From IMG/VR virus record IMGVR_UViG_3300037297_000066, positions 310,001 to 374,000 of that record: 64,000 bases of DNA, one strand, 5' to 3'. Shown here piece after piece: positions 38,001-56,697 of this stretch. Made by a program: the position numbers and the translations under genes. Every line of letters begins with the position of its first letter. The first letter of the stretch is position 1. The notes under the pieces are model-generated. The model saw nothing but the letters and a program-made list of their open reading frames with translations, was not told the origin of the DNA and did not search any database.

Positions 38001-38295
38001 TCACGAGAAGATGGGCATGAACTTCGACACTGCCAAGGGTCTCGTGAATGAGTTGGATCGAGTAGCGGACGAGATCGAGAAGGAAGCCTTCGGTGAGGAG
38101 TCGTTGCATCGTCGGCAGGCCGAGGTGCTCCAGCGGGATCAAGACGAGCCCTACATGGACACGTTCAACTCTCCAATGGCGCCCGTTCAGACCGATTCCG
38201 ACGAACCCTACATGGATGCCTTCGTGGACGACCAGAGCGTGGCCGTGGACGATGGCAAGTCCCAGGACGGCAAGGAACTGACTCCCAACAACTGA
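35056..38295 (+). CDS. Very large modular head-associated protein (1079 aa)
   Basis: Basic N-terminal motif, P/E/K low-complexity tract, coiled coil, several globular segments; probable internal starts at 37180 and 37933. Confidence 0.75.
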   Translation: MQPIWATKNDLESENEETERLVREAPKKKPPRRDRRRERVNPDRDLDTQGDPDLKNDPDLSLNYKDVGGSVSERVAFRFVAKKDRIKVRRKDTGTVVYVTKEKLREEGGKYELVKPKEDPPWGGKGAQPGETDTEPPWKEKGPPEKPGKEPQKPSEKPPVEEGAQPEKEEKPAEGGPEEPGKGGEKPAEGEHTEEKPSAAEAEIDKLIEQDPSFQKALLSVQEKANAYAQKSEGILKELEGLEKDSSPEAAERKKALVDELNSGQDELNSYMEAVQSRVDRAQAKQDLAQQKADKEQAEAEAEAAKSEAEKAGIKDPQRPEPTEAERMEAMEMVVDTFPPDIAADIIAKGYHPSDLQSMAASYEAAKVSPIPKGDLKDFAAKVGKIYQIDPSKVKPPKTWEKEGREVPFEELSPKEQSEAMRQHQMQTVAMSLAAKDQLTEALTQRTRSGKAQIPEELAGTLADFMLSPEGKGREDQAKNLASQTFKITREKGEAENIKDGVVKKLLGSLPKEAQQIASGFLQANDYLVAREKFLDSGEISEHQSPGDIVSGFRDLDSYFQKRSKLYPGGNDQHAGKLLQSQIRTRLKELDQRKYGEVRKRLDAIAADEYDIAEGKWRKARKAWEVKKKKHQQKVREYDNAHLITDWKNLPEGHPGEFTEAPPEPPKKPLRYDLVRGKRPRVWEEQFRRMGQKVASRYLKSFYPCSVPMDSNSRTGAYHGVEPADNSPPEGYAGWQQAHQRDLGESDFDIILQSAREWMKSPVLSKDIDGYLPDMQLRAALDLAIQSSPYNRAINPQTYNILLARLANIPPEEFLGQTLRSATVLVRTAGSSYVVEKMSLVVYGKGPFNIDVIRAIEGQYFQYRDEEGNVRDDGYAHVDDVKYGRALPRMQELQGFVPEGSLNISYPKGASAEAFKAVQAACRKHKLQVEKAKPGYKPSFRKMPGSKTRRAQSSKGEDSMNKQAANGILGRLDRLADNIQNNHEKMGMNFDTAKGLVNELDRVADEIEKEAFGEESLHRRQAEVLQRDQDEPYMDTFNSPMAPVQTDSDEPYMDAFVDDQSVAVDDGKSQDGKELTPNN

Positions 38296-40557: not shown

Positions 40558-41979
40558 ATGCGTGAGAGAACCACTTGGAGCCTAGAAGCTATTGCCGCCA
40601 GGACTGCAGCGGAGCAGGAGCGTACCGCTGACGATCCTCGGGCAATGAATCAAGACCACCATTCTCAGCAACCGTCGGCAGACCAGTACGAGATCGGTGG
40701 GCCCAGCGACTTCGCAGAGGATGTGACTCCTCCCAACTGGAAGGACGAGCAGGCTGGTGGCGAGACGAAGAGGGATGAGATCGGACTTCCCCAGTTCGAC
40801 TCGGACACCTTCAAGCAAGGCGCCTTGGACGAGGAGCATCTGCTCAAGAAGTCCGAGGTCTGTTCGAAGGTGGCCTCTTTGATCCTTGGCGAGGCCACAG
40901 AGGCTGCTGTCGAAGATCAGGCTGTCGAGTTGATGGACCTCTCCGATGCCACTCTTCTGTCGATGTACGCTCGTGTACTCGAAGCCAAGGGTCAGGTTCC
41001 TCCCCAGTTCTTGAAGAACAAGGGCGACGACAAGGGCGACGACAAGGGCGACGACAAGGGTCAAGAGCAAGACAAGGAAGCTGCCCAGCAGAAGCAGCAG
41101 CAGGACCAAGCCGAAGACCAGGAAGGTCAAGAAGGCAAGGAAGCTGCCCAGCAGAAGCAGCAGCAGGACCAAGCCGAAGACCAGGAAGGTCAAGAAGGCA
41201 AGGAAGCCGCTCAGCAGAAGCAGCAGCAGGACCAAGCCGAAGACCAGGAAGGTCAAGAAGGCAAGGAAGCTGCTCAGCAGAAGCAGCAGCAGCAGGGTGA
41301 AGGCGAGGAAGGCGACCAGGAGCAAGGCAAGGAAGCCGAGGCTCTCAAGCAGGCTTCCGAGGCTCTGACCCTTTTGGCTCAGCAGCAACCGTTCCAGGCT
41401 CAGGCTCAGCAGTTGCTATCGCTGGTTCAGCAACAGTTGGCCCAACAGCAGCAGCAGTCTTGCTCGACTCCGATGTCGCAGCAACAGCAGCAGGCTCAGC
41501 AGCAGATGCAGCAGGCTCAGCAGATGATGGAGCAGGCTCAGCAGATGATGCAGCAAGCCCAGCAGCCGCAGCCGCAACAGTCGATGGAGGACGAGCTCCT
41601 CCAGCAGTTGCAGCAGGAGCCTGGTCAGGATGACCTGATGGAAGAGACCATCGAGATGGAAAGCCCTTCGATGGATGTCGGTGAGATCGCTCTGGACCAG
41701 CAGGATGCAGAGACTCTCGGACAGCTCTTCGCTTCCAATCCGGAAGTTCAGCAGGCCAGGCAGGCTCAGGCTCTGGAGACCGGGGTGCCTCAGGCTCCCT
41801 CAGCTCCAATGACTCGCACTGCTTCGGTCAATCCGTCCCTGCGAACTGTTGGCACTCAGCCGACAGGTGGGGTCTCCCAATTGGGAGGTGCTGCTGCTGC
41901 TGACTCCGGCTCCCAGGATACGGACAAGCTTTCAGCTCTCTGGAATTCGGCTCCTGACGTCAAGGATGTTTTCCGCTGA
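40558..41979 (+). CDS. Capsid scaffolding protein, Gln-rich with tandem repeats
   Basis: 473-aa low-complexity helical protein between protease and capsid genes; AAGGAG RBS. Confidence 0.7.
   Translation: MRERTTWSLEAIAARTAAEQERTADDPRAMNQDHHSQQPSADQYEIGGPSDFAEDVTPPNWKDEQAGGETKRDEIGLPQFDSDTFKQGALDEEHLLKKSEVCSKVASLILGEATEAAVEDQAVELMDLSDATLLSMYARVLEAKGQVPPQFLKNKGDDKGDDKGDDKGQEQDKEAAQQKQQQDQAEDQEGQEGKEAAQQKQQQDQAEDQEGQEGKEAAQQKQQQDQAEDQEGQEGKEAAQQKQQQQGEGEEGDQEQGKEAEALKQASEALTLLAQQQPFQAQAQQLLSLVQQQLAQQQQQSCSTPMSQQQQQAQQQMQQAQQMMEQAQQMMQQAQQPQPQQSMEDELLQQLQQEPGQDDLMEETIEMESPSMDVGEIALDQQDAETLGQLFASNPEVQQARQAQALETGVPQAPSAPMTRTASVNPSLRTVGTQPTGGVSQLGGAAAADSGSQDTDKLSALWNSAPDVKDVFR
41018..41060 (+). repeat. 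12-bp tandem repeat, about 3.6 copies (ACAAGGGCGACG; encodes KGDD)
   Basis: Read directly from sequence. Confidence 0.9.
41073..41292 (+). repeat. 63-bp tandem repeat, about 3.5 copies (encodes KEAAQQKQQQDQAEDQEGQEG)
   Basis: Units start at 41073, 41136, 41199 and 41262 and are nearly identical. Confidence 0.92.
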
Positions 41980-42061: not shown

Positions 42062-42685
42062 ATGCCTCTCAGCATCGGACAAGGCTCGGGTGACTTCCGG
42101 GAGACCTCCGGTAGGGTACAAATCCTCCATGCAGGAGTCCGCAACTCTGTGGGCATTCTGACGGCGGATGCGTTCACGCAGGCGAATCCCCCCATCGTCA
42201 CCACGGCAGCCAACGTCAGCACGACATTGTCGGGCATCTCGAAGTTGGGTGTCTTGGGTGCTTCCATCGCCTTCACCAGGCCCGATATCGGCAATGCCCG
42301 AATCGGTGGCCCGGTGCAGGTGGGTGCTGCCTATGTGGCAGCTCAGAAGCCCCTCGGCATCTTCATCAACGATTCGCTCGGCAATGCCTACGAAAACACA
42401 CCGGGTCCCGCCTCCGAGCGTGGTCCGTACCTCTCAGGTCAAGGTACCTGTGCCGTATCTCTCTGGGAGACCCAGATCCAGATCGGTGCCAACACGGCCC
42501 TGACCTACGCTGCTGGTGACAAGCTGTACGCCAGTGTGAACGGCCTGCTCACGAACAGGATTGAGGACGCTTATGAGTACAACGTGTCCGGTCAGAACGA
42601 CCCGGATTTCGTGACAATCATGGGTGTCGTCAAGATCGCTCCTGATGCAAGCAACACTCTGATGGTCCTCGACCTGCGAGTCTAA
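42062..42685 (+). CDS. Capsid decoration/cement protein (positional)
   Basis: 207 aa, beta-rich, directly upstream of MCP; YAAGDKLYASVNGLLT; strongly C-ending codons. Confidence 0.6.
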   Translation: MPLSIGQGSGDFRETSGRVQILHAGVRNSVGILTADAFTQANPPIVTTAANVSTTLSGISKLGVLGASIAFTRPDIGNARIGGPVQVGAAYVAAQKPLGIFINDSLGNAYENTPGPASERGPYLSGQGTCAVSLWETQIQIGANTALTYAAGDKLYASVNGLLTNRIEDAYEYNVSGQNDPDFVTIMGVVKIAPDASNTLMVLDLRV

Positions 42686-42701: not shown

Positions 42702-43580
42702 ATGAATCAGGTTTCCAACGCTGTCAAGCAGCAGATCATCAGCGAGTACATCAAGACCGCAGCTGGCCGTGCCAAGCTGGCAGCCTCGATGACCCAACCT
42801 CTGCGTCTCCGCAGAGACTACACCGCCGTCGGCCGCAAGACCTTCTTGGTCGAAGAGCTGCCTGATGGCGCACTCCCCATCTACGACAAGGACCCCGAGG
42901 TCACAGCGTACGTCGTGGGCGAGGAAGGCGAGAACATCGTCGCCATCCAGAAGCCACGTCGTGTGATCTTCCCGTTGTTCGAGATCGCCTCGAATCCCGA
43001 GATCCCCTTGACCCAGATCAAGGAGCGTCGTTTCGATCTGATCGAACGATCCCAAGACCTGGCCAAGGCTCAGATTCAGGCGGCCGAGGACGAGCGGGTC
43101 TTCGCCGTTCTGGACTCCATCGCCGTATCGGGCTTCGACACGCTTCCGGGTGGAACAAACCCGGATGTGAACGTCGTTGCTCCGATCAGCCCGTCGGTGC
43201 TGGCTGACGCCTTCGCTGAAGTGGAGAGGCACGACCTTCGGGTCGCTCGCATCTACATGAATGCGGTGGACTACGCCGACATCCGCAAGTTCGGTCGGGA
43301 CATCCTGGACATCGAGAGCCAGGCCACCCTGCTGAAGACGGGTCTGCAGGCAACCCTCTGGGGCGCTCAGATCATCACGAGCCGCCTGGTTCCGGCCGGG
43401 TACGTGTATGTCTGTGCAGAACCGGAGAACTTCGGCCGGTTCCCCGTTCGGACCGAACTTACCGTTCTGTCGGCAGACGATCCGAAGGCTCGAACCATCG
43501 GGTTCAGCTGCTTCCAGAACGTCGGAATCGGTGCCTTCAACCCCCGTGGGTTGGTCCGCATCGTGGTCACTCGACTGTAG
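42702..43580 (+). CDS. Major capsid protein (HK97-like fold)
   Basis: 292 aa; GRKTFLVEELPDGALPIYD, spine-helix-like DLIERSQDLAKAQIQAAEDERVF, LWGAQIITS, G+V; strong GGAGG RBS; followed by a hairpin. Confidence 0.8.
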   Translation: MNQVSNAVKQQIISEYIKTAAGRAKLAASMTQPLRLRRDYTAVGRKTFLVEELPDGALPIYDKDPEVTAYVVGEEGENIVAIQKPRRVIFPLFEIASNPEIPLTQIKERRFDLIERSQDLAKAQIQAAEDERVFAVLDSIAVSGFDTLPGGTNPDVNVVAPISPSVLADAFAEVERHDLRVARIYMNAVDYADIRKFGRDILDIESQATLLKTGLQATLWGAQIITSRLVPAGYVYVCAEPENFGRFPVRTELTVLSADDPKARTIGFSCFQNVGIGAFNPRGLVRIVVTRL

Positions 43581-43607
43581 TAGTTTAGGCTACTTAGCGA
43601 GTATTGT

Positions 43608-43643
43608 TGAGCCCCTGGTCGGCAACAGCTGGCCGGGGGCTCA
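43608..43643 (+). terminator. Long hairpin after the capsid gene
   Basis: TGAGCCCC...GGGGCTCA outer stem extended by G-U pairs; followed by GCATATTTGT. Confidence 0.65.
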
Positions 43644-43646
43644 GCA

Positions 43647-43660
43647 TATTTGTCTGACTG
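43647..43660 (+). repeat. Direct repeat, left copy (TATTTGTCTGACTG)
   Basis: 13/14 identical to 45407-45420. Confidence 0.8.
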
Positions 43661-43828
43661 GTTGGCCTGTTTAAGGGTCTAAGGTAACGGGAACCGTCCG
43701 AAGTTTATTTGTGATAACCATCCCTACCGAGATCGCTCGTGAGTTGATGATCTTGGCCGACCGGGTGGCCGCTAAACCTAGCGTCTAGGGAGTTACTTTC
43801 GTCCGTCTGCTGGTGTATCTCTAGAGGG

Positions 43829-44494
43829 ATGCATGCGTCTTGGAAGAAGATCCTCCAAGGGGAGTTCGAGAAGCCCTACTTTCAGTCTTTGATAGAGTTC
43901 GTCAATAAGGAGCGTAGGGAGGGCGTGGTCTTTCCTCCTCCGGGGACGCTTTTCAATGCCTTTCAAGTCCCCTACGAAGAGGTCAAGGTTCTGATCCTAG
44001 GGCAAGATCCTTACCCCAATGCCGGACAGGCTTACGGTTTCTGCTTTTCGGTGCAGCCTGGCGTCAAGCCTCCCCCTAGCCTTGTGAACATCTACAAGGA
44101 GCTGGAGGGGGACCTGGGGATCAAGCCTCCAAAGCACGGATGCCTTCAGCATTGGGTGGACCAGGGGGTCTTCCTTCTCAACGCTGTATTGACGGTCCGA
44201 GCTCACCAGTCGGGTTCTCACCAAGGCAAGGGGTGGGAGCAGTTCACAGACAAGGTCATACGGCTCCTAGACGCCCGTCAGGAGCCTGTTGTCTTCGTTC
44301 TATGGGGCAGGTATGCCCGGAACAAGAAGGACCTCATAGACTGCCAGAGGCACCTTGTATTGGAGGCTGCTCATCCCTCTCCAATGTCGGCTAGGAACGG
44401 GTTCTTCGGAAGCCGCCCCTTCTCTCAGATCAACGCAGCCTTGGAGTATTCGGGGCTGGATCCTATAGACTGGCAACTACCCCCGAAGGTCTGA
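43829..44494 (+). CDS. ung: Uracil-DNA glycosylase, family 1
   Basis: ILGQDPY, GFCFSV, PPSLVNIYKEL, QGVFLLN, VFVLWG, HPSPMS. Confidence 0.96.
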   Translation: MHASWKKILQGEFEKPYFQSLIEFVNKERREGVVFPPPGTLFNAFQVPYEEVKVLILGQDPYPNAGQAYGFCFSVQPGVKPPPSLVNIYKELEGDLGIKPPKHGCLQHWVDQGVFLLNAVLTVRAHQSGSHQGKGWEQFTDKVIRLLDARQEPVVFVLWGRYARNKKDLIDCQRHLVLEAAHPSPMSARNGFFGSRPFSQINAALEYSGLDPIDWQLPPKV

Positions 44495-45099
44495 TGGAGC
44501 AGCTAGCTTTTCCGTTCTTTGAGTGGGAGGTAGCAGTACCTTTGGAGCCTCAACCCTACTATGGGAGCAGTTTTTTTGGGGGTAATGACTGGCACTTCTG
44601 GACAGGCGGGGGGTGTACTTCTGTCGCTACTTTCCCAACCAAATCCTACGAGAACAAGGGGACCTACTATCATGCTTGCCCTTTCAAGGTAGGAAGACAG
44701 GCTGGGGGTGGGGTGATAAGGAAAATCCGGCTCTTCCAAGGGTACTCAGAGACCTGGTACTGGATTCTGAGTCTGGATCCGGTGGGAGATTGTGTAGACT
44801 TGCTGAGCGATTGGGAGTCTCTCGGGGTTTCTAACAGGGAATGGTACCACTACGACGACAGATACTGGCACAACGAAGAAATCCATGTGAGGTCTCGGGA
44901 TGCTATTGTTGCTCGGAAGAAGACTCCTTCCAAGATTCCATACTTGACCTTAGAGTACAACGTGGAAGGGGATGTGGTGGGCGCTAAACTAGAACTTTTT
45001 AGGGCTTATTCAGGTGAAGAGCTTGAAGAGCTCAAGAACTTGGTTCCCTCAAAGGCTTTCGATCTAATTAAGTCTGCCTATCAGGAATGCATGTGTTAG
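44494..45099 (+). CDS. Hypothetical protein, aromatic-rich
   Basis: 201 aa; ATG overlaps the ung stop. Confidence 0.65.
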   Translation: MEQLAFPFFEWEVAVPLEPQPYYGSSFFGGNDWHFWTGGGCTSVATFPTKSYENKGTYYHACPFKVGRQAGGGVIRKIRLFQGYSETWYWILSLDPVGDCVDLLSDWESLGVSNREWYHYDDRYWHNEEIHVRSRDAIVARKKTPSKIPYLTLEYNVEGDVVGAKLELFRAYSGEELEELKNLVPSKAFDLIKSAYQECMC

Positions 45100-45108
45100 G
45101 GCTTGTGG

Positions 45109-45378
45109 ATGACTAGCATGGACCAAATTGTAGAAGAGATGGACTTTCAGGTTCTGCAAGAGGGAATCGAGAGTATTCAAGGTGGGGTCTCTACTCTGAA
45201 GGTTTGGGTAATAGGGCTGGTTCGCAAGAACTCTGGGGAGAGTGTACCCCTTTTGGTCTACCTGGAGCGCGAAGAGGCTATGAAAAGCTACGGATCCATG
45301 ACTCAAGTGATGCTGAAGCGAGGGTTGGATTCCGAGTGGGAGTTGACTCTCAAGAGCAGGTATCTGGAGAATTTGTGA
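45109..45378 (+). CDS. Hypothetical protein
   Basis: About 90 aa; start uncertain (45103, 45109 or 45118). Confidence 0.55.
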   Translation: MTSMDQIVEEMDFQVLQEGIESIQGGVSTLKVWVIGLVRKNSGESVPLLVYLEREEAMKSYGSMTQVMLKRGLDSEWELTLKSRYLENL

Positions 45379-45406
45379 GAGGGGAGGCCCTCTGCTTTCG
45401 GTAAAG

Positions 45407-45420
45407 TATTTGTCTGATTG
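45407..45420 (+). repeat. Direct repeat, right copy (TATTTGTCTGATTG)
   Basis: 13/14 identical to 43647-43660. Confidence 0.8.
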
Positions 45421-45460
45421 TCTTAGGGGGAGCCTATTTGCTCTTCAGGAGATGATCAAG

Positions 45461-46570
45461 ATGAGTAACCAGATCCGATACAAGTTGGGGGACTACTTGA
45501 CCTACACGGCCACCCGGAGCTTCGATCTTGGCGCCCACCCGGGCCTGAAGATTTCGGCGGGAGATGAGGTACTGTTCGACGGTACCATCATGAAGTTTGC
45601 CGGAATGGAGGTATCCATTCCCAAGCTTCGGGGAGCTATCAAGCTGGGGTGGTTGGTACCGGCTCAGCAGTACGATCCTGAGGCCCCGGTATTTCCTGTT
45701 TCGGCAGGCATTCAGGTTCGGGCGGCTGATGGCGGCAACCCGATGAACCCCAACCCCCCAAAAACACTTTCCTCTACGGTAGCTGCCGAAGAACAGGAAG
45801 TGATGGCTGTCAGCAGCCACGCCGCTCAGACGAGAGACCGAAACGTGACCAACTACCGGCGTACCCCTGCTTCTGAGAGCAGCCAGGGACAGAGGTATGA
45901 GGGCACCACTGTCGAAGCTCAGGATGGTACGGTGGTCCGGAGCATTCGTACCCCGGCTCGTCAGGACACCAATCTTGGCAAGAAAACGCCTGGACAGGCC
46001 ATCTCCGAGGCTGAGAAGGCTTCCAAGATTCAGCCTGGTCAAGGCATGACCCAGGAGGATTTGCTGGCTAGGATGAGTCCTGAGGACCGTGAGCAATACC
46101 TCTCAGAGATCCGTGCCCGCAAGAGCCAGTACGTAGACGAGCCTCAGGTGGTAGGCCGTGTGTCTGCTACTCAGGTTTCGGAGAGCATGGGTATCAAGAC
46201 GGCTATGACGGTTGGTGGGGGCACGGCCATTGCAGATCCCAGCTCTGGGGAGAGGGCTCCTCAGAACGTGGTAACCGAGGTAGAGGGGATCAAGTTCACC
46301 AACACCTCTTCGGTCAAGAAGCCAGTTCAGCCTCAGTCTCAGCCTGTGGCCCCTGCTGACGAGGGTAGTTCGAGGAAGATTGCCAAGGCGATTTGCTCGG
46401 ATTTCCCGGATAACTACGTGTTCACGGACCCCATTCGCAAGAAAATTGCCAGGCTTCAGGCAGACTACGATGATCGGCCGGACATCATTCGGGCCGTAGC
46501 AGCAGCGGATACCGATCCCGAGGTTCGAGGACGTCTGTTGGAGGAATTTCCCCAGGCATTCTCGGGGTGA
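45461..46570 (+). CDS. Hypothetical virion-module protein
   Basis: ATG 45461 lies 9 nt after AGGAG; N-terminal beta domain, Q/T/P-rich middle, helical C-terminus. Confidence 0.75.
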   Translation: MSNQIRYKLGDYLTYTATRSFDLGAHPGLKISAGDEVLFDGTIMKFAGMEVSIPKLRGAIKLGWLVPAQQYDPEAPVFPVSAGIQVRAADGGNPMNPNPPKTLSSTVAAEEQEVMAVSSHAAQTRDRNVTNYRRTPASESSQGQRYEGTTVEAQDGTVVRSIRTPARQDTNLGKKTPGQAISEAEKASKIQPGQGMTQEDLLARMSPEDREQYLSEIRARKSQYVDEPQVVGRVSATQVSESMGIKTAMTVGGGTAIADPSSGERAPQNVVTEVEGIKFTNTSSVKKPVQPQSQPVAPADEGSSRKIAKAICSDFPDNYVFTDPIRKKIARLQADYDDRPDIIRAVAAADTDPEVRGRLLEEFPQAFSG

Positions 46571-46613: not shown

Positions 46614-48746
46614 ATGAGCAAAACCGGTGACAGTGCTGGGCGTCCGAAAGATGCCTCCGCCACAGTTTATCTGATGGAGGAGCTGGGGGACGCTCGCCTC
46701 CGTTGCGACCAACTCATTCGGTATCTGGATGAGGCGGTCAAACTCGTGGAACAGTCCAAGTACAGGGACCACTTCTTCGAGGTAGCGGGGCATCTCATCA
46801 CAGGTCTGCCCGAGGCAGCCTTCAAGCTGCAGAAAGCTCTCCAGGCGGTGGCACTGGCGGCCGACCGTTTGGACTATGAAGAGGTCAAACAAGAACTTCG
46901 GCCCGAGAAGGTCGAGGAGCTTGAGCGAGTTCTTCAGGATGTTCGTATCCGCCAAATCAGACGTCGTTCGGAGCCTCCCATGAATTACAAGGATACCGCT
47001 GAAAGACTCAGACTTCTCGCTGCCAAGATCAAGGAGAGCCAAGCGTTCCCTGTGGTGGAGACGTTGCTTCTGGCGAGTGAGTTGGAAGGGCAACAGAAGG
47101 TGGCTAGTAACCGAGAGGTCTTGGCGGATTTCTTCGAGGGCCTGGCGACTTCTCTGGATGAGGCCCAGCCGGGAGAGATGAGTCGAGCCTATTTGGCCAA
47201 GCTGCTTCGGCGCGTGACCGGGGAGAACCTTCAGGTCAAGCCTCCTGTCAAGCAGGCGGAGTCAGAGGTGACTGCTCTTTCTACCGAGGTAGATGTCAAT
47301 CGTCTGGAGCGGGCGCTTGTTAATGCCGAGGCCCAGGTCAAGGAGATGCGACATTCTCTGAATCTGTACAAGAGAGACCCTGGTCGGAACCAGCCTCAGC
47401 TGAGTAATCTGGTGATAGCTGCCAGCTCTGCTGCCAAGGTTTTAGACCGGCTCATTATCAAGCCCTTGTGGGGGAAGCTGGGAGCCAAGGAAGAGGATCG
47501 AGAGTCTCGTTTCGAGGAGGGGAAGCCAGCGGACCCCACGAAGGACATGAGTCCCGAGGATGCCAAGAAGTGGCGAGAGCAGAATCGTAAGCACCGAGAC
47601 GAGTTCAAGGGCGCTGCTGGAGGAGACCCTGCTGACTTGGCTCACGAGATCCTAGAGCAAGGACTTCGGCATCCTGCTCTGAAGGAGATCACCAGATCTT
47701 GGTCGAAGGTGGAGGCCGATCTGAAGAAGGCGGAGACAGAGCACAAGAACCTGCATCGGTTTGGTGTTGGAAGCACCGAGGATGTGACTCTTGTCAATGC
47801 TCACATCGTTCCGGCTCTCAAGTCCTATCGTGATATGGTGGACATCATCATCGAGCAGATAAGCAAGCGTCTGAAGCGACGTACGGCTTCGGAAGAGGAT
47901 CGAGAGTCTCGTTTCGAGGAAGGGAAACCGGCCGATCCGACCAAGAACATGAGTCCTGAGGACGCCAAGAAGTGGAAAGAGCAGAACGATAGGCACAAGG
48001 ACAAGTTCAAGAGTGCTGATGCCCAAAAGGAGTCTGCCAAGTGGATCCAGAAGGCCATCAAGGACAAGGGAGCTCTTCATCGTCACTTCGGGATCCCTGA
48101 AGACGAGACGATCCCCACCGAGAAGATCAAGAGTGAGCTAGCCAAGCTGAAGAAGAAGGAAGACAAGAGCGACGCTGACAAGAAGCTCCAGCATCAGCTC
48201 AACATGGCTCTCACCCTGCGTGGTCCCAAGGTTCCCCCTCCAGGTGGGAAGAAGGCTGGCGACGAGTGGAAGGTGGAGGCTGTAGAGGTCACGGCTGCTC
48301 TCAAGCCTAAGGACAAGAAAGTCGTCGATGCTTTTGCCGACAAGAAGCCGATGGATGGTGACTTGCTCGACACGGACGGTAAGAAGCTGGAGAAGTCTGG
48401 CCTGGGTGGCGGTACATTCGCCGAGTGGAAGGGTGGCAAGATCCACATTCTGAGCCCGGGTGGGAACCGGAGCCATGACGCAATCCTCCGCTACATGAAG
48501 AAGTCGATCCCCAAGAACGACCTTGCCGACCATCCCCAGCTGAGGGCCGCGTCAGACCCTTGGAAGGCCGCAGCCCTCAAGTTCAAGCCTGGTGACAAGG
48601 TGAGGGTCAAGGACTCTCATGGTTCTGCCAAGTTCCGGGGCGACACTGGAGAGATCGAAAAGAACGTTCCGATGGGCAAGTACTACGTCCAGCTCAAGAA
48701 GAACGGACGGTCTTTGGTGGACGAGGGAGACCTGGAAAAGGCGTGA
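46614..48746 (+). CDS. Modular (polyprotein-like) head-associated protein
   Basis: Duplicated 40-aa unit, KWIQKAIKDKGALH module, C-terminal KOW/SH3-like FKPGDKVRV module; modules bounded by [KR]-x-A motifs. Confidence 0.8.
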   Translation: MSKTGDSAGRPKDASATVYLMEELGDARLRCDQLIRYLDEAVKLVEQSKYRDHFFEVAGHLITGLPEAAFKLQKALQAVALAADRLDYEEVKQELRPEKVEELERVLQDVRIRQIRRRSEPPMNYKDTAERLRLLAAKIKESQAFPVVETLLLASELEGQQKVASNREVLADFFEGLATSLDEAQPGEMSRAYLAKLLRRVTGENLQVKPPVKQAESEVTALSTEVDVNRLERALVNAEAQVKEMRHSLNLYKRDPGRNQPQLSNLVIAASSAAKVLDRLIIKPLWGKLGAKEEDRESRFEEGKPADPTKDMSPEDAKKWREQNRKHRDEFKGAAGGDPADLAHEILEQGLRHPALKEITRSWSKVEADLKKAETEHKNLHRFGVGSTEDVTLVNAHIVPALKSYRDMVDIIIEQISKRLKRRTASEEDRESRFEEGKPADPTKNMSPEDAKKWKEQNDRHKDKFKSADAQKESAKWIQKAIKDKGALHRHFGIPEDETIPTEKIKSELAKLKKKEDKSDADKKLQHQLNMALTLRGPKVPPPGGKKAGDEWKVEAVEVTAALKPKDKKVVDAFADKKPMDGDLLDTDGKKLEKSGLGGGTFAEWKGGKIHILSPGGNRSHDAILRYMKKSIPKNDLADHPQLRAASDPWKAAALKFKPGDKVRVKDSHGSAKFRGDTGEIEKNVPMGKYYVQLKKNGRSLVDEGDLEKA
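47489..48017 (+). repeat. Two dispersed copies of a ~126-bp coding repeat (EEDRESRFEEGKPADPTK[DN]MSPEDAKKW...FK)
   Basis: Copies begin at 47489 and 47891; the first 30 nt are identical. Confidence 0.9.
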
Positions 48747-49621
48747 AGCAGCCGCTCGTTCCTCGACCGCCCTATGGAGAGGGCCAGTCTCGGGAGCCAC
48801 AAGCGGAAGCTAGGCTCCCGCAGGGGGAACCTGCCGACAAAGGGCTGCCTCTGGACCCTGACTACTCGGGATACCAGACGTTTGCCAAGCCAGTGGAGGA
48901 CATTCGGGAGCCGGACAACGATGACGAGTCCATTTGGAGGGTGGATGGCCCCAACGACCTGACCAAGGACCAGAGCCATCCTGATGTGAACGAGGAGAAC
49001 TCTGACCAGAGCACCAGCTACCCTGGCCGAGGGTTCGATCAGGACAACTCCAAGACCAAATACCCGTATCGGGACGACCGGCCGAACACACACAACTCGG
49101 CTCAACCCAACCCTTGGCACGTAACCCTCCTTCATTTGCTCCAGAAGGCCCCCTCAAGGCTTTTCAGGGCTGGGGGAAGGGTCAAGGTCGCTGCTACCTC
49201 AGAGGAGATTCTGGCGGGTCTAGACCCTGATTTCCAGGAGCGAGCCCAGGCGTGTACGGTGACCCTCAAGAGGGCGGATATCCGAAACCTGAGGTGGATA
49301 TTCGTGGTCAACTGTGGGCACAAGGATTGGGCTTCCAAGATCAAGGCCGTTCGGGGCAAGGGCAACATCACCGACTTCAACAAGCTGGACTTGCAAATCA
49401 CCTGTTCCTGTCCGGCTTGGCGGTGGTTGGGTCCGGAATTTCACGCCAAAGGGGATCACTACATTGATGGGAAGCCTCGGGGCACGGCTTCACCTCCCAA
49501 CATACGAGATCCTGAGCGGGACAACTTCGTCTGCAAGCATGTTGCCGCTGTTTTAGCTTTTACCCGGGGATGGAAGGTGCCTGTGAAAGTCATCCGGAAG
49601 CCCCGGCCCAAAAAGAAATGA
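48743..49621 (+). CDS. Protein with an acidic N-terminus and a SWIM-like zinc finger
   Basis: ITCSCPAW...VCKHVAAVL. Confidence 0.75.
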   Translation: MKQPLVPRPPYGEGQSREPQAEARLPQGEPADKGLPLDPDYSGYQTFAKPVEDIREPDNDDESIWRVDGPNDLTKDQSHPDVNEENSDQSTSYPGRGFDQDNSKTKYPYRDDRPNTHNSAQPNPWHVTLLHLLQKAPSRLFRAGGRVKVAATSEEILAGLDPDFQERAQACTVTLKRADIRNLRWIFVVNCGHKDWASKIKAVRGKGNITDFNKLDLQITCSCPAWRWLGPEFHAKGDHYIDGKPRGTASPPNIRDPERDNFVCKHVAAVLAFTRGWKVPVKVIRKPRPKKK

Positions 49622-49628
49622 AGATCAG

Positions 49629-50039
49629 ATGCCTACCTACACAGTTCGCCGCAAAACCGATGGGGTATTTCTCCGACGACGTCTCTCTTTTGTGGAGTAC
49701 GATGCCGTCAAGGCCGGAGAACAAACACTGACTGACGAGGATGGGGTGGCTTTGGAGTTGGTGTTTGATCCGGGAGAGGTGGGCTTCGTTCTCAAAGACG
49801 GTCAGAGTGGTGGGTGGGCCACGAAGGCGGGTAAGGAGAACCAGTATCGGAAGGCTCGTCGTAAAGAGATGTCTCGTCGAGAACGAGACCATGTTTTCAA
49901 GAATCGGCTCGTTCCAAATGTGGGAGGACTGGAAGCTCCCACGTGGAAGGACGCTCAGGAAGAGGTTCGTCGGGTGAAGGGTTCAGAAGCAGCCAGCACC
50001 TATGACAAACACGTAGCTAAGGAGCAAGCGAATGGCTGA
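49629..50039 (+). CDS. Hypothetical protein, FmdB-like N-terminus without cysteines
   Basis: MPTYTVRRK...F..GGWATK resembles the MPxYxYxC...F.G.GWY layout. Confidence 0.65.
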   Translation: MPTYTVRRKTDGVFLRRRLSFVEYDAVKAGEQTLTDEDGVALELVFDPGEVGFVLKDGQSGGWATKAGKENQYRKARRKEMSRRERDHVFKNRLVPNVGGLEAPTWKDAQEEVRRVKGSEAASTYDKHVAKEQANG

Positions 50040-50676
50040 CCGACTGTTTTCTGTTGTCCGCAGACGCCCGAACATGGTGGACATCATCGTTCCCAAAATT
50101 CAAGGTGTAGAGGGCTACAGGTTTCTGTCGTCTCTCAACTTTGATGGGACTTTCAATGCCTTGTTCACAGCGCCTATCGCTTCAGGCTATTTGGATCAGA
50201 ACATCAATCCGGCAGTCTTGAGTTCTGTTCCAGGGAGCAGCTTAGTTCGCTGCGTGTTCGATCCTGCAACCTTTTCTGGAGTTCCTTGGAACCTGGTGGA
50301 CACCCAGCCTTTCTGGCTCAAATTCCAGCCAGTCCCTGGAACAGCCGGAGCTCCCTCCCTGCTTCTGCCCGATAGTGCCCATCATGGGATAGGGAGGGTG
50401 ACCATTTCTGGGACAGCTCCGAATGAATCTTCGGTGGCTGATTCTTTGGAGATACATCTGCCCATGAGCATGAAGGATGTCATCATCCTCAATGAGGAGC
50501 CTGGAGCAGGCAACGGTCTGTATGTGGCGTTTGAGACAGGAGGCCCGGAAGTTCTACTCCCTCAAGGTAGCCCGAAGTACGACCCTCGTGAGGGGAACAT
50601 CAGTAAGCTTCTGGTTCGAGGATCTGGTGGGACGGCTGCTTTCTCGGCTTCGTTCACCAATGTGTTTCCCGCATAG
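50032..50676 (+). CDS. Hypothetical virion protein (beta-rich)
   Basis: 214-aa ORF with AAGGAG upstream. Confidence 0.7.
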   Translation: MADRLFSVVRRRPNMVDIIVPKIQGVEGYRFLSSLNFDGTFNALFTAPIASGYLDQNINPAVLSSVPGSSLVRCVFDPATFSGVPWNLVDTQPFWLKFQPVPGTAGAPSLLLPDSAHHGIGRVTISGTAPNESSVADSLEIHLPMSMKDVIILNEEPGAGNGLYVAFETGGPEVLLPQGSPKYDPREGNISKLLVRGSGGTAAFSASFTNVFPA

Positions 50677-54354: not shown

Positions 54355-56697
54355 ATGGCCCGACAATTTCTAGTCACCACTACTGGAACCCAGAATCCTG
54401 TTGTCATTGCTGACTTGGGCTCACGGTCTATCTCGCACCCTACGACGGATCTGGATCTGGCTCTGGAGTACAGTGCCGAGGAGATCGTAGCTTCGGCAGA
54501 CCTTCAGTCAGCCATCACTTCTGGCTACATTACGGCCGAAGACGAAAACTCCAACAGCATTACCAACATCGCCACCCAGGCTGGAGGCGTCACTAGCTTC
54601 AACTCTCGGGCGGGAGCGGTTGAGCCCACCTCAGGAGACTATGCCGTTTCGGATCTGGGATCGGGCACGTTGAGTCAGCTCAACTCGGTTATCAGTGATG
54701 CCACCCTAGATGATTCCAGCGATCCTCGGGACCCTACCAGCCATGCTTTGGGTGGAGCAGCTCACAGCACTTCTACGCTGTCCCAACTGAACGCCAAAAT
54801 CTCGGACGCTACTCTAGATGATTCTAGTGCTGCTAGGACTCCCACAGCTCACGCTTCCTCTCATTCTGATGGGGGTTCGGATGAAATCTCGGTAGAGGAT
54901 CTTGCAACGACTGCTTCTGACACTAGTCAAGTTCTTCGTCCTGATGGTGCAGGGGGCTTGGCTTTCGGAGCGGATGCTGGGGGACAAGAAATCTACGACG
55001 CTATTGTGGCTGCAAGTGGAGGGGATTACACGTCAGTAGCCGCAGCGTTCGCAGCTGGTAAGAAGTCGGTTTACGTACGCAAAGGGACCTACGTAGAAAC
55101 AGCTGACGTGGTTCTGACGGATGGTTGCAGACTCCATGGTGAAGTGGGGGCGATCATCTATCTAAACGGCAGCTATTCTGTCAAAGTGGACGGGTCTGGG
55201 GGAACCCAGGAAACTACTGGGACCATTGCGGTCACAAACGGCAGCACACAGGTCACAGGTACCAGCACTACCTTTACCAACTTGTCGGCGGGAGACTACA
55301 TCCTCATCGACACCACCTTCTACGAGATCGACTCAATCACCAGTGACACGGTGTTGGATCTGACGCTCATGTGGGAAGGGGCTACAGAGTCGGGTCTGAG
55401 CTACATCGCTCAGACGATGGTCAATGTTGCTGCCTTTCAGAGCATCATCATCACTGGCTCATCTTCTGTGGGACTCTACATTCGAGGGGGCTTGGCTGTC
55501 TCTCTCAACAACGTAGTGATCACGGGTTGTGCCAACAACGTACAGATCATCGATTCTGGATCCATCAGCATGTTGACTGTTCTGTCGAGAGACAGTGCAG
55601 GAGTGGGTCTCTCTTTTGATGGGGTTTATGGCAGCGGAATGGTCAACGTTGCTTCCTACAACAACAACGGGGCTGGTTTCTACTTCACAGGCTGTAGCGG
55701 CTTCTTTGTGGCTAGCTGCAACGCTTCTGGGAATGATGGGAATGGGTTCGATGTAACGGGTTCTTCAACCAAGGTTACTCTGACCACTTGTGGCTCTTCT
55801 CAGAACAATGGGAAAGGCTTCAACGTAGACTCAGGGGTAGAGCTCTGCACTATCAACGCTTGTCTGTGTCGGGGAAACGGCTCTGAAGGTATCGACATTG
55901 ACGGCTCTGAAAATGTGGTGGTCAACTGTGCCATTCGGGACAACGGGGCAAATGGCATTCAGTGTGGGATCAGTGGCCTGATTGCTAGCAACCAGATCTC
56001 GAATAACACCAGCAATGGGATCATGATCGGCTATGATGCCGATGTACTTGTAGACGGGAACATTATCTACGACAACGGGAACTACGGCATTAACACTGAG
56101 GGTACAGGTAACACCAACTGTATCGTTTCGAACAACCGAATCTATGACAACACCGGCAACATCGGGATTCGGATAGCCTCTGGGAGCACTGGCTGGGTGT
56201 TGAGCGGGAACCTGGTCACCGGACACACCACGAACATCTCGAATCTGGAGAGCACTACCAAGATCTCTGTGGATGCTACTGGGACTCCGGCGGCAGGTAA
56301 CTTGGTCAGGCACAACGGGACCAACCCTGCTTGGACTAGTGCACTAACGGGGCTGACTACAGCCTCCTTCACGGAATACCAGATCAATGGGGGCACGGCC
56401 GTTACGGGGAACTTTGCTCCGAACTTCACCACCAATGGGCAGAAGCAAATGGTGGTCCTGGGGGCATCCGTAAGTATCACGTCCCTGACTTTCCCAGGGG
56501 CAGGAAACTACATTCTTAGAATCGTTCAAGACGGGACTGGGAGTAGGGTATTGACCTGGCCGGCAGCGGTACAAGCACCAGGGGGAAAGACTTCAGGATT
56601 GGTGCTGAGTACGGGGGCTGGGGCAGTAGATGTTGCTGCGATCTATTACGACGGATCGACAGCACGGGTAGTTCTGTCAAAGAACTTCGCTACATGA
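54355..56697 (+). CDS. Tailspike/fibre with a right-handed parallel beta-helix (pectin-lyase/NosD-like), putative depolymerase
   Basis: Many xxNNxIxxNxxxGI repeats (aa ~400-640), YVRKGTYVE cap, N-terminal 36-aa duplication TLSQLN..ISDATLDDSS. Confidence 0.8.
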   Translation: MARQFLVTTTGTQNPVVIADLGSRSISHPTTDLDLALEYSAEEIVASADLQSAITSGYITAEDENSNSITNIATQAGGVTSFNSRAGAVEPTSGDYAVSDLGSGTLSQLNSVISDATLDDSSDPRDPTSHALGGAAHSTSTLSQLNAKISDATLDDSSAARTPTAHASSHSDGGSDEISVEDLATTASDTSQVLRPDGAGGLAFGADAGGQEIYDAIVAASGGDYTSVAAAFAAGKKSVYVRKGTYVETADVVLTDGCRLHGEVGAIIYLNGSYSVKVDGSGGTQETTGTIAVTNGSTQVTGTSTTFTNLSAGDYILIDTTFYEIDSITSDTVLDLTLMWEGATESGLSYIAQTMVNVAAFQSIIITGSSSVGLYIRGGLAVSLNNVVITGCANNVQIIDSGSISMLTVLSRDSAGVGLSFDGVYGSGMVNVASYNNNGAGFYFTGCSGFFVASCNASGNDGNGFDVTGSSTKVTLTTCGSSQNNGKGFNVDSGVELCTINACLCRGNGSEGIDIDGSENVVVNCAIRDNGANGIQCGISGLIASNQISNNTSNGIMIGYDADVLVDGNIIYDNGNYGINTEGTGNTNCIVSNNRIYDNTGNIGIRIASGSTGWVLSGNLVTGHTTNISNLESTTKISVDATGTPAAGNLVRHNGTNPAWTSALTGLTTASFTEYQINGGTAVTGNFAPNFTTNGQKQMVVLGASVSITSLTFPGAGNYILRIVQDGTGSRVLTWPAAVQAPGGKTSGLVLSTGAGAVDVAAIYYDGSTARVVLSKNFAT

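What the first reader, a model, noticed from the sequence alone, without database searches (positions are those of the whole stretch)
46614..48746. Polyprotein-like 710-aa protein made of small unrelated modules, possible capsid-delivered cargo array
Seen, in order: a helical N-terminal module; an in-frame internal ATG at 46980 with GGAG; a helical module; repeat 1 (EEDRESRFEEGKPADPT...FK); a helical module; repeat 2; a KWIQKAIKDKGALH module; a small beta module; and a KOW/SH3-like module ending LEKA. Almost every junction carries KLGA, KGAA, RTAS, KSA/KESA, KKA, RAAS or KAAA. Inference: a cassette-like gene whose product is packaged and cut into several small proteins, analogous to T4 internal proteins but encoded as one chain. 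The 40-aa repeat may be a targeting tag, and the modules may be swapped between related phages, possibly as injected anti-host or anti-defence effectors.
Basis: partly seen in the sequence, partly recalled or inferred. Interest (0 to 1): 0.68.

Follow-up and report, generated by a model that had tools for sequence, protein, structure and literature searches.

The report
Huge-phage protein: anchor plus swappable module array
A 710-residue protein in the structural gene block of a 437-kb phage has a conserved helical N-terminal domain followed by a string of roughly 90-residue modules that differ between related phages and are separated by a very conserved 44-residue spacer; it looks like a precursor of several small virion-carried proteins, but neither cutting nor packaging has been shown.

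Summary
The ORF at 46614-48746 (+), its 44-aa internal repeat, the in-frame ATG at 46980 and the small-residue junction motifs are all present as described. The window lies in a 437,331-bp phage genome with terminal repeats. The gene sits at a fixed, syntenic place between the major capsid gene and the tail-fibre genes.

More than 300 homologues exist, many on 350-465 kb contigs. All 120 that I examined share the same plan:
- a conserved all-alpha N-terminal domain (aa 1-205);
- a variable array of small modules, with a length peak at 80-99 aa and 73 sequence clusters among 209 modules;
- 1-4 copies of a highly conserved 44-45-aa spacer, and K-x-A-[S/A/G] junction motifs.

The three C-terminal modules also occur elsewhere as stand-alone 69-130-aa genes and inside unrelated proteins. 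The spacer almost never stands alone. No enzymatic domain was found; the only domain hints are for nucleic-acid binding (VP2-like, KOW, HMG).

Proteolytic processing and delivery in the capsid remain inference from gene position, the junction motifs and analogy with T4, phiKZ and SPN3US internal head proteins. The "targeting tag" idea gets little support: in this genome the spacer occurs only in this gene. I file it as a new variant of packaged multidomain ("polyvalent") phage proteins.

The parts
46614..48746 (+). Whole gene, 710 aa (P0001), pI 9.1, 36% charged residues
46647..46658 (+). aa 12-15: K-x-A-[G/S] motif just before the first helix, nearly invariant in the family; candidate N-terminal processing site (inferred)
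   Evidence: K12 in 92, A14 in 94 and G/S15 in 95 of 107 sequences, most of the rest being gaps
46659..46943 (+). aa 16-110: conserved helical hairpin plus third helix, the most conserved part of the N-terminal domain
   Evidence: pLDDT 90-96 over aa 21-80; 11 invariant columns
46944..46985 (+). aa 111-124: conserved but low-confidence (pLDDT <50 over 111-119) linker, family consensus V-R-I-R-x-V-Q-R-R-S-E-P-M-x-P; contains the in-frame ATG at 46980 (M123) with GGAG upstream
46986..47228 (+). aa 125-205: four-helix bundle, second half of the conserved N-terminal domain
47244..47483 (+). aa 211-290: variable helical module H3; cluster of 13 members, found at array positions 1, 2 or 3 in relatives
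47484..47615 (+). aa 291-334: spacer repeat copy 1
47616..47885 (+). aa 335-424: variable helical module H4 (cluster of 4 members)
47886..48017 (+). aa 425-468: spacer repeat copy 2
48018..48257 (+). aa 469-548: module M5, basic (net +7); weakly like Fusellovirus VP2 (PF25632) and phrog_15706; occurs as stand-alone 86-130-aa genes
48249..48275 (+). aa 546-554: junction motif of the [KR]-x-A-[SAG]-[DE]-x-W-K-[VA] type
48273..48533 (+). aa 554-640: module M6, a widespread roughly 85-aa alpha/beta domain; found stand-alone at 93-103 aa and inside proteins of up to 2118 aa; no known fold match
48543..48575 (+). aa 644-654: second junction motif (R-A-A-S-D-P-W-K-A-A-A)
48576..48743 (+). aa 655-710: module M7, basic, KOW/SH3-like by motif only; stand-alone 69-125-aa relatives exist; 75-85% identical copies end the arrays of P0009 and P0004
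39021..40514 (+). Context: prohead protease-like gene; candidate processing enzyme (inferred, not tested)
   Evidence: phrog_18299, E 2.7e-10; phrog_2774, E 4.5e-24
42702..43580 (+). Context: major capsid protein, 92-95% identical in relatives whose other structural genes are 40-69% identical

Best explanation
The gene encodes a lineage-specific structural-module protein of a clade of huge phages found in sediments and wetlands.

Shown:
- A conserved all-alpha N-terminal domain (aa 1-205).
- Behind it, an evolutionarily fluid array of autonomous modules of about 90 aa.
- Between modules, a strongly conserved 44-45-aa spacer and short K-x-A-[S/A/G] and [AS]-[DE]-P-W-K junction motifs.

Inferred:
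- The N-terminal domain acts like the long N-terminal propeptides or targeting regions of phiKZ/SPN3US internal head proteins and brings the chain into the prohead.
- The prohead protease encoded 6 kb upstream cuts at the small-residue junctions.
- The released basic modules of about 10 kDa, some apparently nucleic-acid-binding, stay with the DNA and enter the host with it.
- The spacer is the element that makes the array work. It could be a processing or docking unit recognised by a very conserved phage partner, and at the DNA level a shared stretch at which modules can be exchanged.
For: Family and architecture:
- There are 311 or more homologues of 405-1185 aa, many on 350-465 kb contigs.
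- 119 of 120 match the N-domain profile at their N-terminus, and all 120 carry 1-4 spacer copies.
- The lengths of segments between junctions peak at 80-99 aa (114 of 330), with a second hump at 140-180 aa.
- 209 single modules fall into 73 clusters, at varying positions along the array.
- Some modules are far more similar than the rest of the protein. M7 is 85% identical in P0004 and 74% in P0009, against 37-53% for the N-domain; M5 is 78% identical directly behind the N-domain of P0006.

Autonomy of the modules:
- M5, M6 and M7 each occur as stand-alone genes and in 140 representative proteins that lack both the N-domain and the spacer.
- The spacer was found in only 7 small proteins out of 5.8 billion clusters, mostly on contigs under 2 kb.

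Junction signals:
- K-x-A-[G/S] is nearly invariant at aa 12-15.
- K41 (97%), A43 (69%) and A/S44 (61%) close each spacer, and A or S precedes it.
- The [AS]-[DE]-P-W-K-[VA] motif recurs at junctions across the family.

Gene position:
- Gene order here is TerL, portal, protease, Gln-rich scaffold-like protein, p207, MCP, a variable insertion zone, p386, this gene, SWIM protein, p136, p214, and further on a tail fibre gene.
- From the protease to p214 the order is kept in the 421-kb and 433-kb relatives.

Module content:
- The C-terminal modules are basic.
- Domain hints are only VP2-like, KOW and HMG-box.

Precedent and a related family:
- SPN3US internal head proteins carry 111-254-aa N-terminal propeptides that the prohead protease removes by several cuts; the authors suggest, by analogy with T4, that these propeptides may target proteins into the prohead core (PMC10052503).
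- A second spacer-bearing family often carries an N-terminal C39-type peptidase domain, which links the spacer to proteolysis.
Against: - There is no proteomic or expression evidence. Only DNA runs hold the gene.
- The specificity of this protease is unknown, and the candidate site (basic, any, Ala, small) carries little information.
- The strict W-K junction motif and the spacer occur in no other ORF of the 437-kb genome, so they are not a general maturation signal shared with other head proteins.
- The N-domain and M6 have no significant fold match.
- One member of the second spacer-bearing family sits in a non-structural neighbourhood with Cpn60 and RNase T, so the spacer is not tied to virion genes everywhere.
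- Every large ORF in the window is on the + strand, so co-orientation adds nothing.
- The N-domain diverges at the same rate as its neighbours, 43-53% against 40-69%. There is therefore no sign of unusually fast evolution apart from the module turnover.
Confidence: 0.35

Rival explanations
1. It is an uncut multidomain internal or DNA-associated protein. The whole 80-kDa beads-on-a-string chain is incorporated through its N-terminal domain. It works intact, for example by organising or shielding the very long packaged genome with several weak nucleic-acid-binding modules. The spacers are folded mini-domains or rigid linkers.
For: The C-terminal modules are basic and there are VP2-like, KOW and HMG hints. 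The spacer has helix-capping motifs (D-P-T and S-P-E-D) and four conserved aromatic or hydrophobic positions (F9, M21, W29, F40), which suit a small fold. No cleavage has been demonstrated. In SPN3US, 42 head proteins are not cleaved (PMC10052503).
Against: Conserved small-residue motifs sit exactly at the junctions and at aa 12-15. The modules function alone elsewhere as single genes. Module number and order vary freely, which is hard to reconcile with one cooperative structure.
Confidence: 0.25
2. It is not a virion component. It is a late (or early) intracellular protein whose N-terminal domain oligomerises or localises it, and whose variable modules bind host or phage nucleic acids or proteins during takeover, replication or defence evasion.
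For: Only gene position links it to the particle. Huge-phage structural blocks hold non-structural insertions: a UDG sits two genes upstream here, and relatives have homing endonucleases and a patatin gene. A member of the second spacer family lies among non-structural genes. The small variable modules have the size typical of anti-defence proteins (my own knowledge).
Against: In the three genomes compared, the gene keeps a fixed place between the same two conserved neighbours while the insertion zone next to it varies. Conserved N-terminal part plus variable cargo is the usual layout of packaged or delivered proteins (PMC5512222; PMC10052503).
Confidence: 0.2
3. It is an assembly-only core or scaffold component. 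It helps build the very large prohead and is degraded and expelled at maturation; the junction motifs are degradation sites.
For: The N-terminal half is all-alpha and elongated. It lies near the protease and MCP. There are several candidate cleavage sites.
Against: A Gln-rich repetitive 473-aa protein sits in the classical scaffold position between the protease and MCP. A scaffold would not be expected to swap unrelated folded modules freely while the MCP stays 92-95% identical.
Confidence: 0.1
4. It is an external decoration or fibre protein that displays variable modules on the capsid surface for adhesion, in the manner of Hoc.
For: It has a variable C-terminal module array behind a conserved anchor, and it lies in the structural block.
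Against: None of the 63 longest members has an Ig-like, lectin or carbohydrate-binding domain. The modules are highly charged and basic. The beta-rich 207-aa protein immediately upstream of the MCP is a better decoration candidate.
Confidence: 0.05
5. The spacer is a self-processing unit. The almost invariant Asp-Pro-Thr in its centre is cut without a protease, as with Asp-Pro or Asn-Pro autocleavage in GDPH, FrpC-type or FlhB NPTH modules (my own knowledge), so the array falls apart on a pH or ion trigger.
For: D16, P17 and T18 are each 98% conserved in 250 gapless spacer copies, more than the flanking Ala positions.
Against: Known self-cleaving modules are folded domains of 100 residues or more, while the spacer has 45. 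The conservation is equally explained by folding or partner binding. Nothing here tests it.
Confidence: 0.04

Closest known systems
Polyvalent proteins of phages and conjugative elements (Iyer et al. 2017, PMC5512222)
   Same: Many unrelated domains are strung in one polypeptide. They are encoded by phages with portal-terminase packaging, next to virion genes. They are predicted to be packaged and delivered with the DNA and sometimes processed by proteolysis. Their architectures vary between relatives.
   Different: Described polyvalent proteins are built largely from recognisable enzymatic or DNA-binding effector domains (MuF, ART, ArdC-N, zincin-like peptidase and others). None of these was found in 63 family members. 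Here the modules are tiny (about 90 aa), the N-terminal domain is fixed, and a conserved spacer repeat separates the modules. I did not come across such a spacer in the passages of that paper I read.
phiKZ / SPN3US internal head (ejection) proteins with long N-terminal propeptides
   Same: They belong to giant phages. The head proteins have 111-254-aa N-terminal regions that the prohead protease removes by several cuts, and paralogues share the propeptide (PMC10052503). This is comparable to the conserved 205-aa N-domain here.
   Different: There is no sequence relationship: tblastn against 50,697 phage records finds only the spacer, in one uncultured phage. The candidate site here has small residues rather than a motif ending in Glu (the latter from my own knowledge). 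In those phages the cargo is one protein, not an array.
T4 internal proteins IPI-III and Alt with a capsid targeting sequence
   Same: They are small basic proteins carried in the head with the DNA and injected, loaded through an N-terminal signal that the prohead protease removes (PMC5512222; my own knowledge).
   Different: T4 encodes them as separate genes, each with a signal of about 10 aa. Here several modules would share one 205-aa N-domain in one chain. No homology was found.
Fusellovirus VP2 family (PF25632) / phrog_15706
   Same: Module M5 and its stand-alone relatives match the whole profile at E 2e-5 to 3e-3. VP2 is a small basic DNA-binding virion protein (Pfam description; my own knowledge).
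   Different: All scores (18-25 bits) lie below the curated cut-off of 27 bits, and the match concerns only 1 of 7 modules.
C39-peptidase-bearing spacer family of other huge phages (e.g. the ORF at L008:5740-7125 in LR745208.1, and P0267, P0280)
   Same: It carries the same 44-45-aa spacer, plus a variant of it, between variable segments. It is encoded by huge phages.
   Different: It has a different N-terminus (a papain-like C39 domain instead of the helical domain) and a conserved C-terminal domain. It is absent from this genome. Its neighbourhood is not always structural.

Membership tests
Polyvalent proteins (Iyer et al. 2017) | Two to fifteen distinct domains in one polypeptide, with architecture that varies between relatives | tested here: met
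   There are 7 modules plus 2 spacers in P0001. Across 120 relatives, 73 module clusters occur in varying number and order.
Polyvalent proteins (Iyer et al. 2017) | Encoded by a phage with a portal-terminase system, in the neighbourhood of virion genes | tested here: met
   TerL, portal, protease, MCP and tail fibre genes flank it, and synteny is kept in relatives.
Polyvalent proteins (Iyer et al. 2017) | Contains the characteristic effector or processing domains (MuF, ART, ArdC-N, zincin-like peptidase, nucleases, methylases and others) | tested here: not met
   A Pfam scan of the 63 longest members found only KOW, a VP2-like match and spurious matches to the spacer. PHROGs gave one family in one member.
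Polyvalent proteins (Iyer et al. 2017) | Packaged in the capsid and delivered to the host | not testable with these tools
   The phage is uncultured and no proteome is available; only DNA runs were found.
Giant-phage internal head proteins cleaved by the prohead protease (phiKZ/SPN3US type) | Sequence homology to known inner-body or ejection proteins | tested here: not met
   tblastn against 50,697 phage records finds only the spacer, in LR745208.1. There is no PHROG for the N-domain.
Giant-phage internal head proteins cleaved by the prohead protease (phiKZ/SPN3US type) | A long N-terminal propeptide removed at protease motifs | tested here: inconclusive
   A conserved 205-aa N-domain and conserved K-x-A-[S/A/G] motifs exist, but cleavage was not observed.
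T4 internal proteins / capsid targeting sequence | A short N-terminal targeting peptide ending in a T4-type protease site, on a small basic protein | tested here: not met
   There is no such short signal. Instead there is a 205-aa domain, and the protein is 710 aa. The protease matches phrog_18299 and no Pfam family, T4-type S77 included, at E <= 0.01.
Fusellovirus VP2 family PF25632 (module M5 only) | Score at or above the Pfam gathering threshold (27 bits) | tested here: not met
   M5 alone scores 21.4 bits, and its stand-alone relatives score 18.5-25.2 bits. The match is consistent but sub-threshold, so it is a lead and not membership.
KOW / SH3-like barrel (module M7 only) | A match to the KOW profile or an SH3-like fold | tested here: inconclusive
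   M7 has no KOW hit, only NHase_beta_C at E 0.042 and phrog_22674 at E 0.005. KOW profiles do hit modules of a family member (P0068) and of P0258, an unrelated M6-bearing protein.
Phage scaffolding proteins | The gene lies between the protease and the MCP; the protein is helical and has no autonomous folded cargo | tested here: not met
   That position is taken by the Gln-rich 473-aa ORF at 40558-41979. P0001 carries autonomous modules.

The most novel reading that the evidence does not exclude
Huge phages carry a genetically encoded cassette array. One conserved loading domain takes a changeable set of about 10-kDa proteins into the capsid. The conserved 44-aa spacer acts as the processing or docking signal at the protein level and as the recombination site for swapping cassettes at the DNA level. 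The released modules would form a pre-made cocktail of DNA-protecting or anti-defence factors injected with the genome. The same spacer logic is used by a second family that brings its own C39-type peptidase.
Probability: 0.2. Interest if true: 0.8.

Novelty: new variant of a known kind. Interest (0 to 1): 0.62.

Why it matters
Huge phages are known almost only from metagenomes, and most of their structural-module genes have no assigned role. This family is large (more than 300 clusters), sits at a fixed place beside the capsid genes, and shows a rare design: a constant N-terminal domain, a nearly invariant spacer, and dozens of interchangeable mini-proteins.

If the array is processed and delivered, three things would follow:
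- It would be a compact way for a phage to load many small factors with a single targeting domain.
- Its modules would be a ready catalogue of candidate DNA-binding or counter-defence proteins.
- The spacer and N-domain could serve as tools for loading foreign cargo into HK97-fold capsids.

If it is not processed, it is still an unusual example of domain shuffling around a conserved linker. The claim can be tested directly with two genes expressed in E. coli.

Tried and rejected
- Sequence searches for the N-domain or the whole protein gave nothing useful: Pfam, PHROGs, phmmer and a profile against PDB sequences, and the ESM Atlas feature search.
- Fold searches found no significant match. The N-domain model's best Foldseek E-value was 0.34, against generic helical hairpins. 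The M6 model's best E-value was 0.17, and VIA-align gave Z 4.2, which is background level.
- I tried to build one alignment of aa 285-710 from module fragments. MAFFT stacked the M6 and M7 pieces and the spacer pieces onto the wrong regions, so alignment A2 was discarded. M6 was folded alone instead.
- The complex prediction of MCP, protease (aa 1-300) and aa 280-345 of P0001 returned 'no answer' (score 0.00, controls not run). It is evidence neither for nor against binding.
- The 'spacer as general targeting tag' idea was checked by searching the whole 437-kb genome in six frames. No other ORF has the spacer, the W-K junction motif or any P0001 module.
- I looked for a C39-type peptidase as the processing enzyme in this phage. 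The spacer-bearing C39 family is absent, and only two sub-threshold PF13529 hits lie elsewhere in the genome.
- The internal ATG at 46980 as a second start was not adopted. The residue is W, L, V or I in 20 of 107 homologues, and the GGAG overlaps the codons of the conserved Ser-Glu just upstream.
- 'Fast evolution of the gene' was rejected. The N-domain diverges like its neighbours; the MCP is the outlier, being unusually conserved.
- A first single-linkage clustering of segments collapsed into one giant cluster. I replaced it with a stricter clustering of single modules.
- Laying metagenome contigs on the gene showed that contigs break at the spacers, and showed one weak joint from 47977 to 48738 (side 32 nt). 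This is too weak to call a strain variant.
Full report
**1.

The window is bases 310001-374000 of a 437,331-bp virus record with direct terminal repeats, rated 100% complete. The ORF at 46614-48746 (+) is open for 710 codons. The database gene call starts at M21 (P0002, 690 aa). Residues 12-20 are conserved in 107 homologues, so the ATG at 46614 is the likelier start.

The two repeat copies are aa 291-334 and aa 425-468.
- They are 36/44 identical in protein and 107/132 identical in DNA.
- Of the 36 codons with the same residue, 11 differ synonymously. The protein sequence, not only the DNA, is under constraint.

The in-frame ATG at 46980 (M123) with GGAG 6 nt upstream is there. A generalised pattern falls within 5 residues of a module boundary 10 times, against 1.2 +/- 1.2 in shuffles. 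The boundaries were partly set afterwards from homology, so this test is not fully independent.

**2. Context**

All large ORFs of the window are on the + strand. The gene order around the finding is as follows:

| Coordinates | Gene |
|---|---|
| 30449-32449 | large terminase |
| 33203-35029 | portal |
| 35056-38295 | 1079-aa protein with a low-complexity region |
| 39021-40514 | prohead protease-like protein |
| 40558-41979 | Gln-rich repetitive 473-aa protein in the scaffold position |
| 42062-42685 | beta-rich 207-aa protein |
| 42702-43580 | major capsid protein |
| 43829-44494 | uracil-DNA glycosylase |
| 44494-45099, 45410-46570 | unknowns of 201 and 386 aa |
| 46614-48746 | this gene |
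| 48743-49621 | SWIM-finger protein |
| 49629-50039, 50032-50676 | small unknowns |
| 54355-56697 | beta-helix tail fibre |

Two relatives, on contigs of 421 kb and 433 kb, keep the same order from the protease to the 214-aa gene. Variable insertions (homing endonucleases, UDG, DUF5661) occur only between the capsid gene and the 386-aa gene. The gene is therefore a fixed member of the structural block.

**3. The family**

A word-based search found at least 311 homologues of 405-1185 aa. Many lie on contigs of 350-465 kb. I mapped the best 120 in detail.
- 119 match the N-domain profile at their N-terminus; a BLAST map had at first missed it in P0106 and P0120.
- The N-terminal domain has 11 invariant and 33 nearly invariant positions.
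- An AlphaFold2 model (107 sequences, mean pLDDT 79) gives a long helical hairpin plus a third helix (aa 16-110). A conserved but low-confidence linker follows, and then a four-helix bundle (aa 125-205).
- No solved structure matches significantly.

Behind the N-domain the proteins differ.
- Each has 1-4 copies of the spacer, 286 copies in all.
- The spacer is remarkably conserved. D16, P17, T18, M21, W29, D38 and K41 are at 96-98%. F9, E10, G12, P14, A15, D25, A26, K30 and F40 are at 87-96%.
- The segments between spacers and junction motifs have a sharp length peak at 80-99 aa (114 of 330) and a second hump near twice that.
- 209 single modules fall into 73 sequence clusters, 37 of them singletons, and the clusters occupy different positions along the array.
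- Modules shared with P0001 can be much more similar than the rest of the protein, and they sit elsewhere in the chain. M5 lies directly behind the N-domain in P0006, P0022 and P0081. M6 lies directly behind it in P0031. M7 is 85% and 74% identical at the ends of P0004 and P0009.

**4. Modules versus spacer**

An exhaustive HMMER search with aa 470-710 found 664 representative proteins. Of the 143 new ones among the best 150, 140 have neither the N-domain nor the spacer.

| Module | Residues | Stand-alone sizes | Other contexts |
|---|---|---|---|
| M5 | 472-549 | 86-130 aa | inside other proteins |
| M6 | 554-640 | 93-103 aa | once or twice in proteins of up to 2118 aa |
| M7 | 644-709 | 69-125 aa | one copy lies two genes (one on the opposite strand) from a UDG gene on a 2.7-kb contig (L007) |

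The spacer behaves in the opposite way. A search restricted to small proteins found only 7, mostly on contigs under 2 kb, which are probably fragments of larger genes. The modules are therefore autonomous proteins, while the spacer is an element of arrays.

In this genome neither the spacer, nor the W-K junction motif, nor any P0001 module occurs in another ORF. One ORF outside the window shares a module with a relative's array.

**5. What the modules are**

No enzymatic domain was found in the 63 longest members. The only matches were KOW, a VP2-like match, and spurious matches to the spacer (OAS1_C, DUF2280). PHROGs gave almost nothing. One member has a precomputed HMG-box hit.
- M5 and its stand-alone relatives match the Fusellovirus VP2 profile consistently, but below threshold.
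- M6 models as helix, four strands, helix (pLDDT 74), without a significant fold match.
- M5, M6 and M7 are basic, with net charges of +7, +2 and +4.

The hints point to small nucleic-acid-binding proteins rather than enzymes or toxins.

**6. Junction signals**

Three kinds of conserved short motif mark the boundaries.
- K-x-A-[G/S] lies at aa 12-15, just before the first helix, and is nearly invariant.
- The end of each spacer carries K41 (97%), A43 (69%) and A/S44 (61%). The start of each spacer is preceded by A or S, often after a basic residue.
- A separate motif of the type [KR]-x-A-S-[DE]-P-W-K-[VA]-x-A-A recurs at junctions in many relatives. It occurs in P0001 at aa 546-554 and aa 644-654.

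All three share the pattern basic, any, Ala, small. A conserved low-confidence linker between the two halves of the N-domain is a fourth candidate. Short conserved motifs exactly at the joints of otherwise unrelated modules are what a polyprotein would show. They would also suit docking sites or linker caps.

**7. A second spacer family**

The only hit in 50,697 phage records was the spacer, in the 485-kb uncultured phage LR745208.1. There it lies in a 461-aa ORF without the helical N-domain. That ORF has 62 homologues.
- Many start with a papain-like C39-type peptidase domain (PF13529, PF03412).
- After it come the spacer, a variant of it, and variable segments.
- They end in a conserved C-terminal domain.

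This genome lacks that family, and one member sits among non-structural genes. The spacer is thus portable between two array-type families, one of which brings its own peptidase. That is indirect support for a link between the spacer and proteolysis, but it is not evidence about this gene.

**8. Rates of change**

In the two relatives the capsid protein is 92-95% identical. The protease, p207, p386, the SWIM protein, p136 and p214 are 39-69% identical. The array's N-domain is 43-53% identical. The N-domain is therefore not evolving unusually fast. The unusual features are the module turnover and the high conservation of the spacer. Among the genes compared here, only the capsid protein is conserved to a comparable or greater degree. 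I note it as a possible partner, but this is inference only.

**9. Mechanism**

I commit to an internal head protein precursor.
- The N-domain loads the chain into the prohead.
- The prohead protease cuts at the small-residue junctions.
- The basic mini-proteins remain with the DNA.

The modular architecture is shown. The virion location rests on gene position and on analogy. In SPN3US, internal head proteins have 111-254-aa N-terminal propeptides removed by several cuts, and the authors suggest a targeting role for them by analogy with T4 (PMC10052503). Polyvalent proteins are predicted to be packaged and processed (PMC5512222). The cleavage is inferred from motifs alone. My overall confidence is 0.35. 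The rivals are an uncut internal protein (0.25), a non-virion protein (0.2), an assembly-only core protein (0.1), an external decoration (0.05) and Asp-Pro self-processing (0.04).

**10. Tests that gave no answer**

A complex prediction of the capsid protein, the protease and aa 280-345 gave no verdict. Only DNA runs from wetland and marine-sediment metagenomes hold the gene. Their contigs break at the spacers, as expected for repeats, and one weak joint hints at a variant without M5-M7.

**11. Novelty**

The family is unannotated and shares no recognisable domain with described polyvalent or internal head proteins. Its general logic is known: a conserved loading part with variable cargo, in the virion gene block. 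What is new is the regular array of roughly 90-aa cassettes separated by a nearly invariant spacer, which is shared with a peptidase-bearing family. I file it as a new variant of a known kind, with interest 0.62.

Noticed in passing
window 40558-41979 (+): A 473-aa Gln/Glu-rich protein sits between the protease and capsid genes. It has three tandem copies of a unit of about 24 aa rich in Gln, Glu and Lys, and a long poly-Gln-rich stretch. It is probably the scaffolding protein. Only its two ends are conserved in a relative (45% and 44% identity).
   Followed up: partly
window 42702-43580 (+); L002:3098-3973; L004:1712-2593: The major capsid protein is 92-95% identical between phages whose other structural genes are only 39-69% identical. 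That is unusually strong constraint on a 292-aa HK97-type capsid protein of a huge phage.
   Followed up: partly
L002:1-984 and the 433-kb contig (gene upstream of the ~450-aa scaffold-like gene): In both relatives the protease homologue is about 915 aa and carries intein and homing-endonuclease domains (Hom_end_hint, Intein_splicing, LAGLIDADG_3). The window's protease (497 aa) has none.
   Followed up: no
window 43829-44494 (+) and the zone 43581-45409: A uracil-DNA glycosylase gene lies directly after the capsid gene. In relatives the same zone holds different insertions (LAGLIDADG or GIY-YIG endonucleases, DUF5661, small ORFs), so it is a hot spot for gene insertion inside the structural block.
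   Followed up: partly
window 48743-49621 (+): A 292-aa protein with a SWIM zinc-finger match (E 1e-4) starts 4 nt before the end of the array gene. It is conserved and syntenic in relatives (48-55% identity). A zinc-finger protein inside a structural block is unexplained.
   Followed up: no
window 35056-38295 (+): A 1079-aa protein lies directly after the portal gene. It has a long Pro/Glu/Lys-rich low-complexity region and no family match. Its position recalls MuF-like head morphogenesis proteins.
   Followed up: no
L008:5120-7125 (LR745208.1): In this 485-kb phage the C39-like peptidase part (207-aa ORF) and the spacer-bearing part (461-aa ORF) are separate ORFs that overlap by 4 nt. In most homologues they form one protein. 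This could be a split gene or a frameshift.
   Followed up: partly
G000:C1:395849-397138 (outside the window): A 430-aa ORF of the same genome shares a 78-aa segment (40% identity, E 7e-8) with a variable module of the relative P0091. This is another case of a module shared between an array and a different gene.
   Followed up: no
window 47484-48017, runs X2, X3 and X5: Metagenome contigs end or diverge inside the two spacer copies, and loose ends lead into different sequences. One contig in X2 joins 47977 to 48738. The cause may be co-occurring relatives with other modules or assembly branching at the repeat.
   Followed up: partly
window 46614-46676: The public gene call for this protein (690 aa) starts at the second ATG (M21), although conserved residues lie upstream of it. 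The ATG at 46614 has only a weak AGG-type ribosome-binding site.
   Followed up: yes
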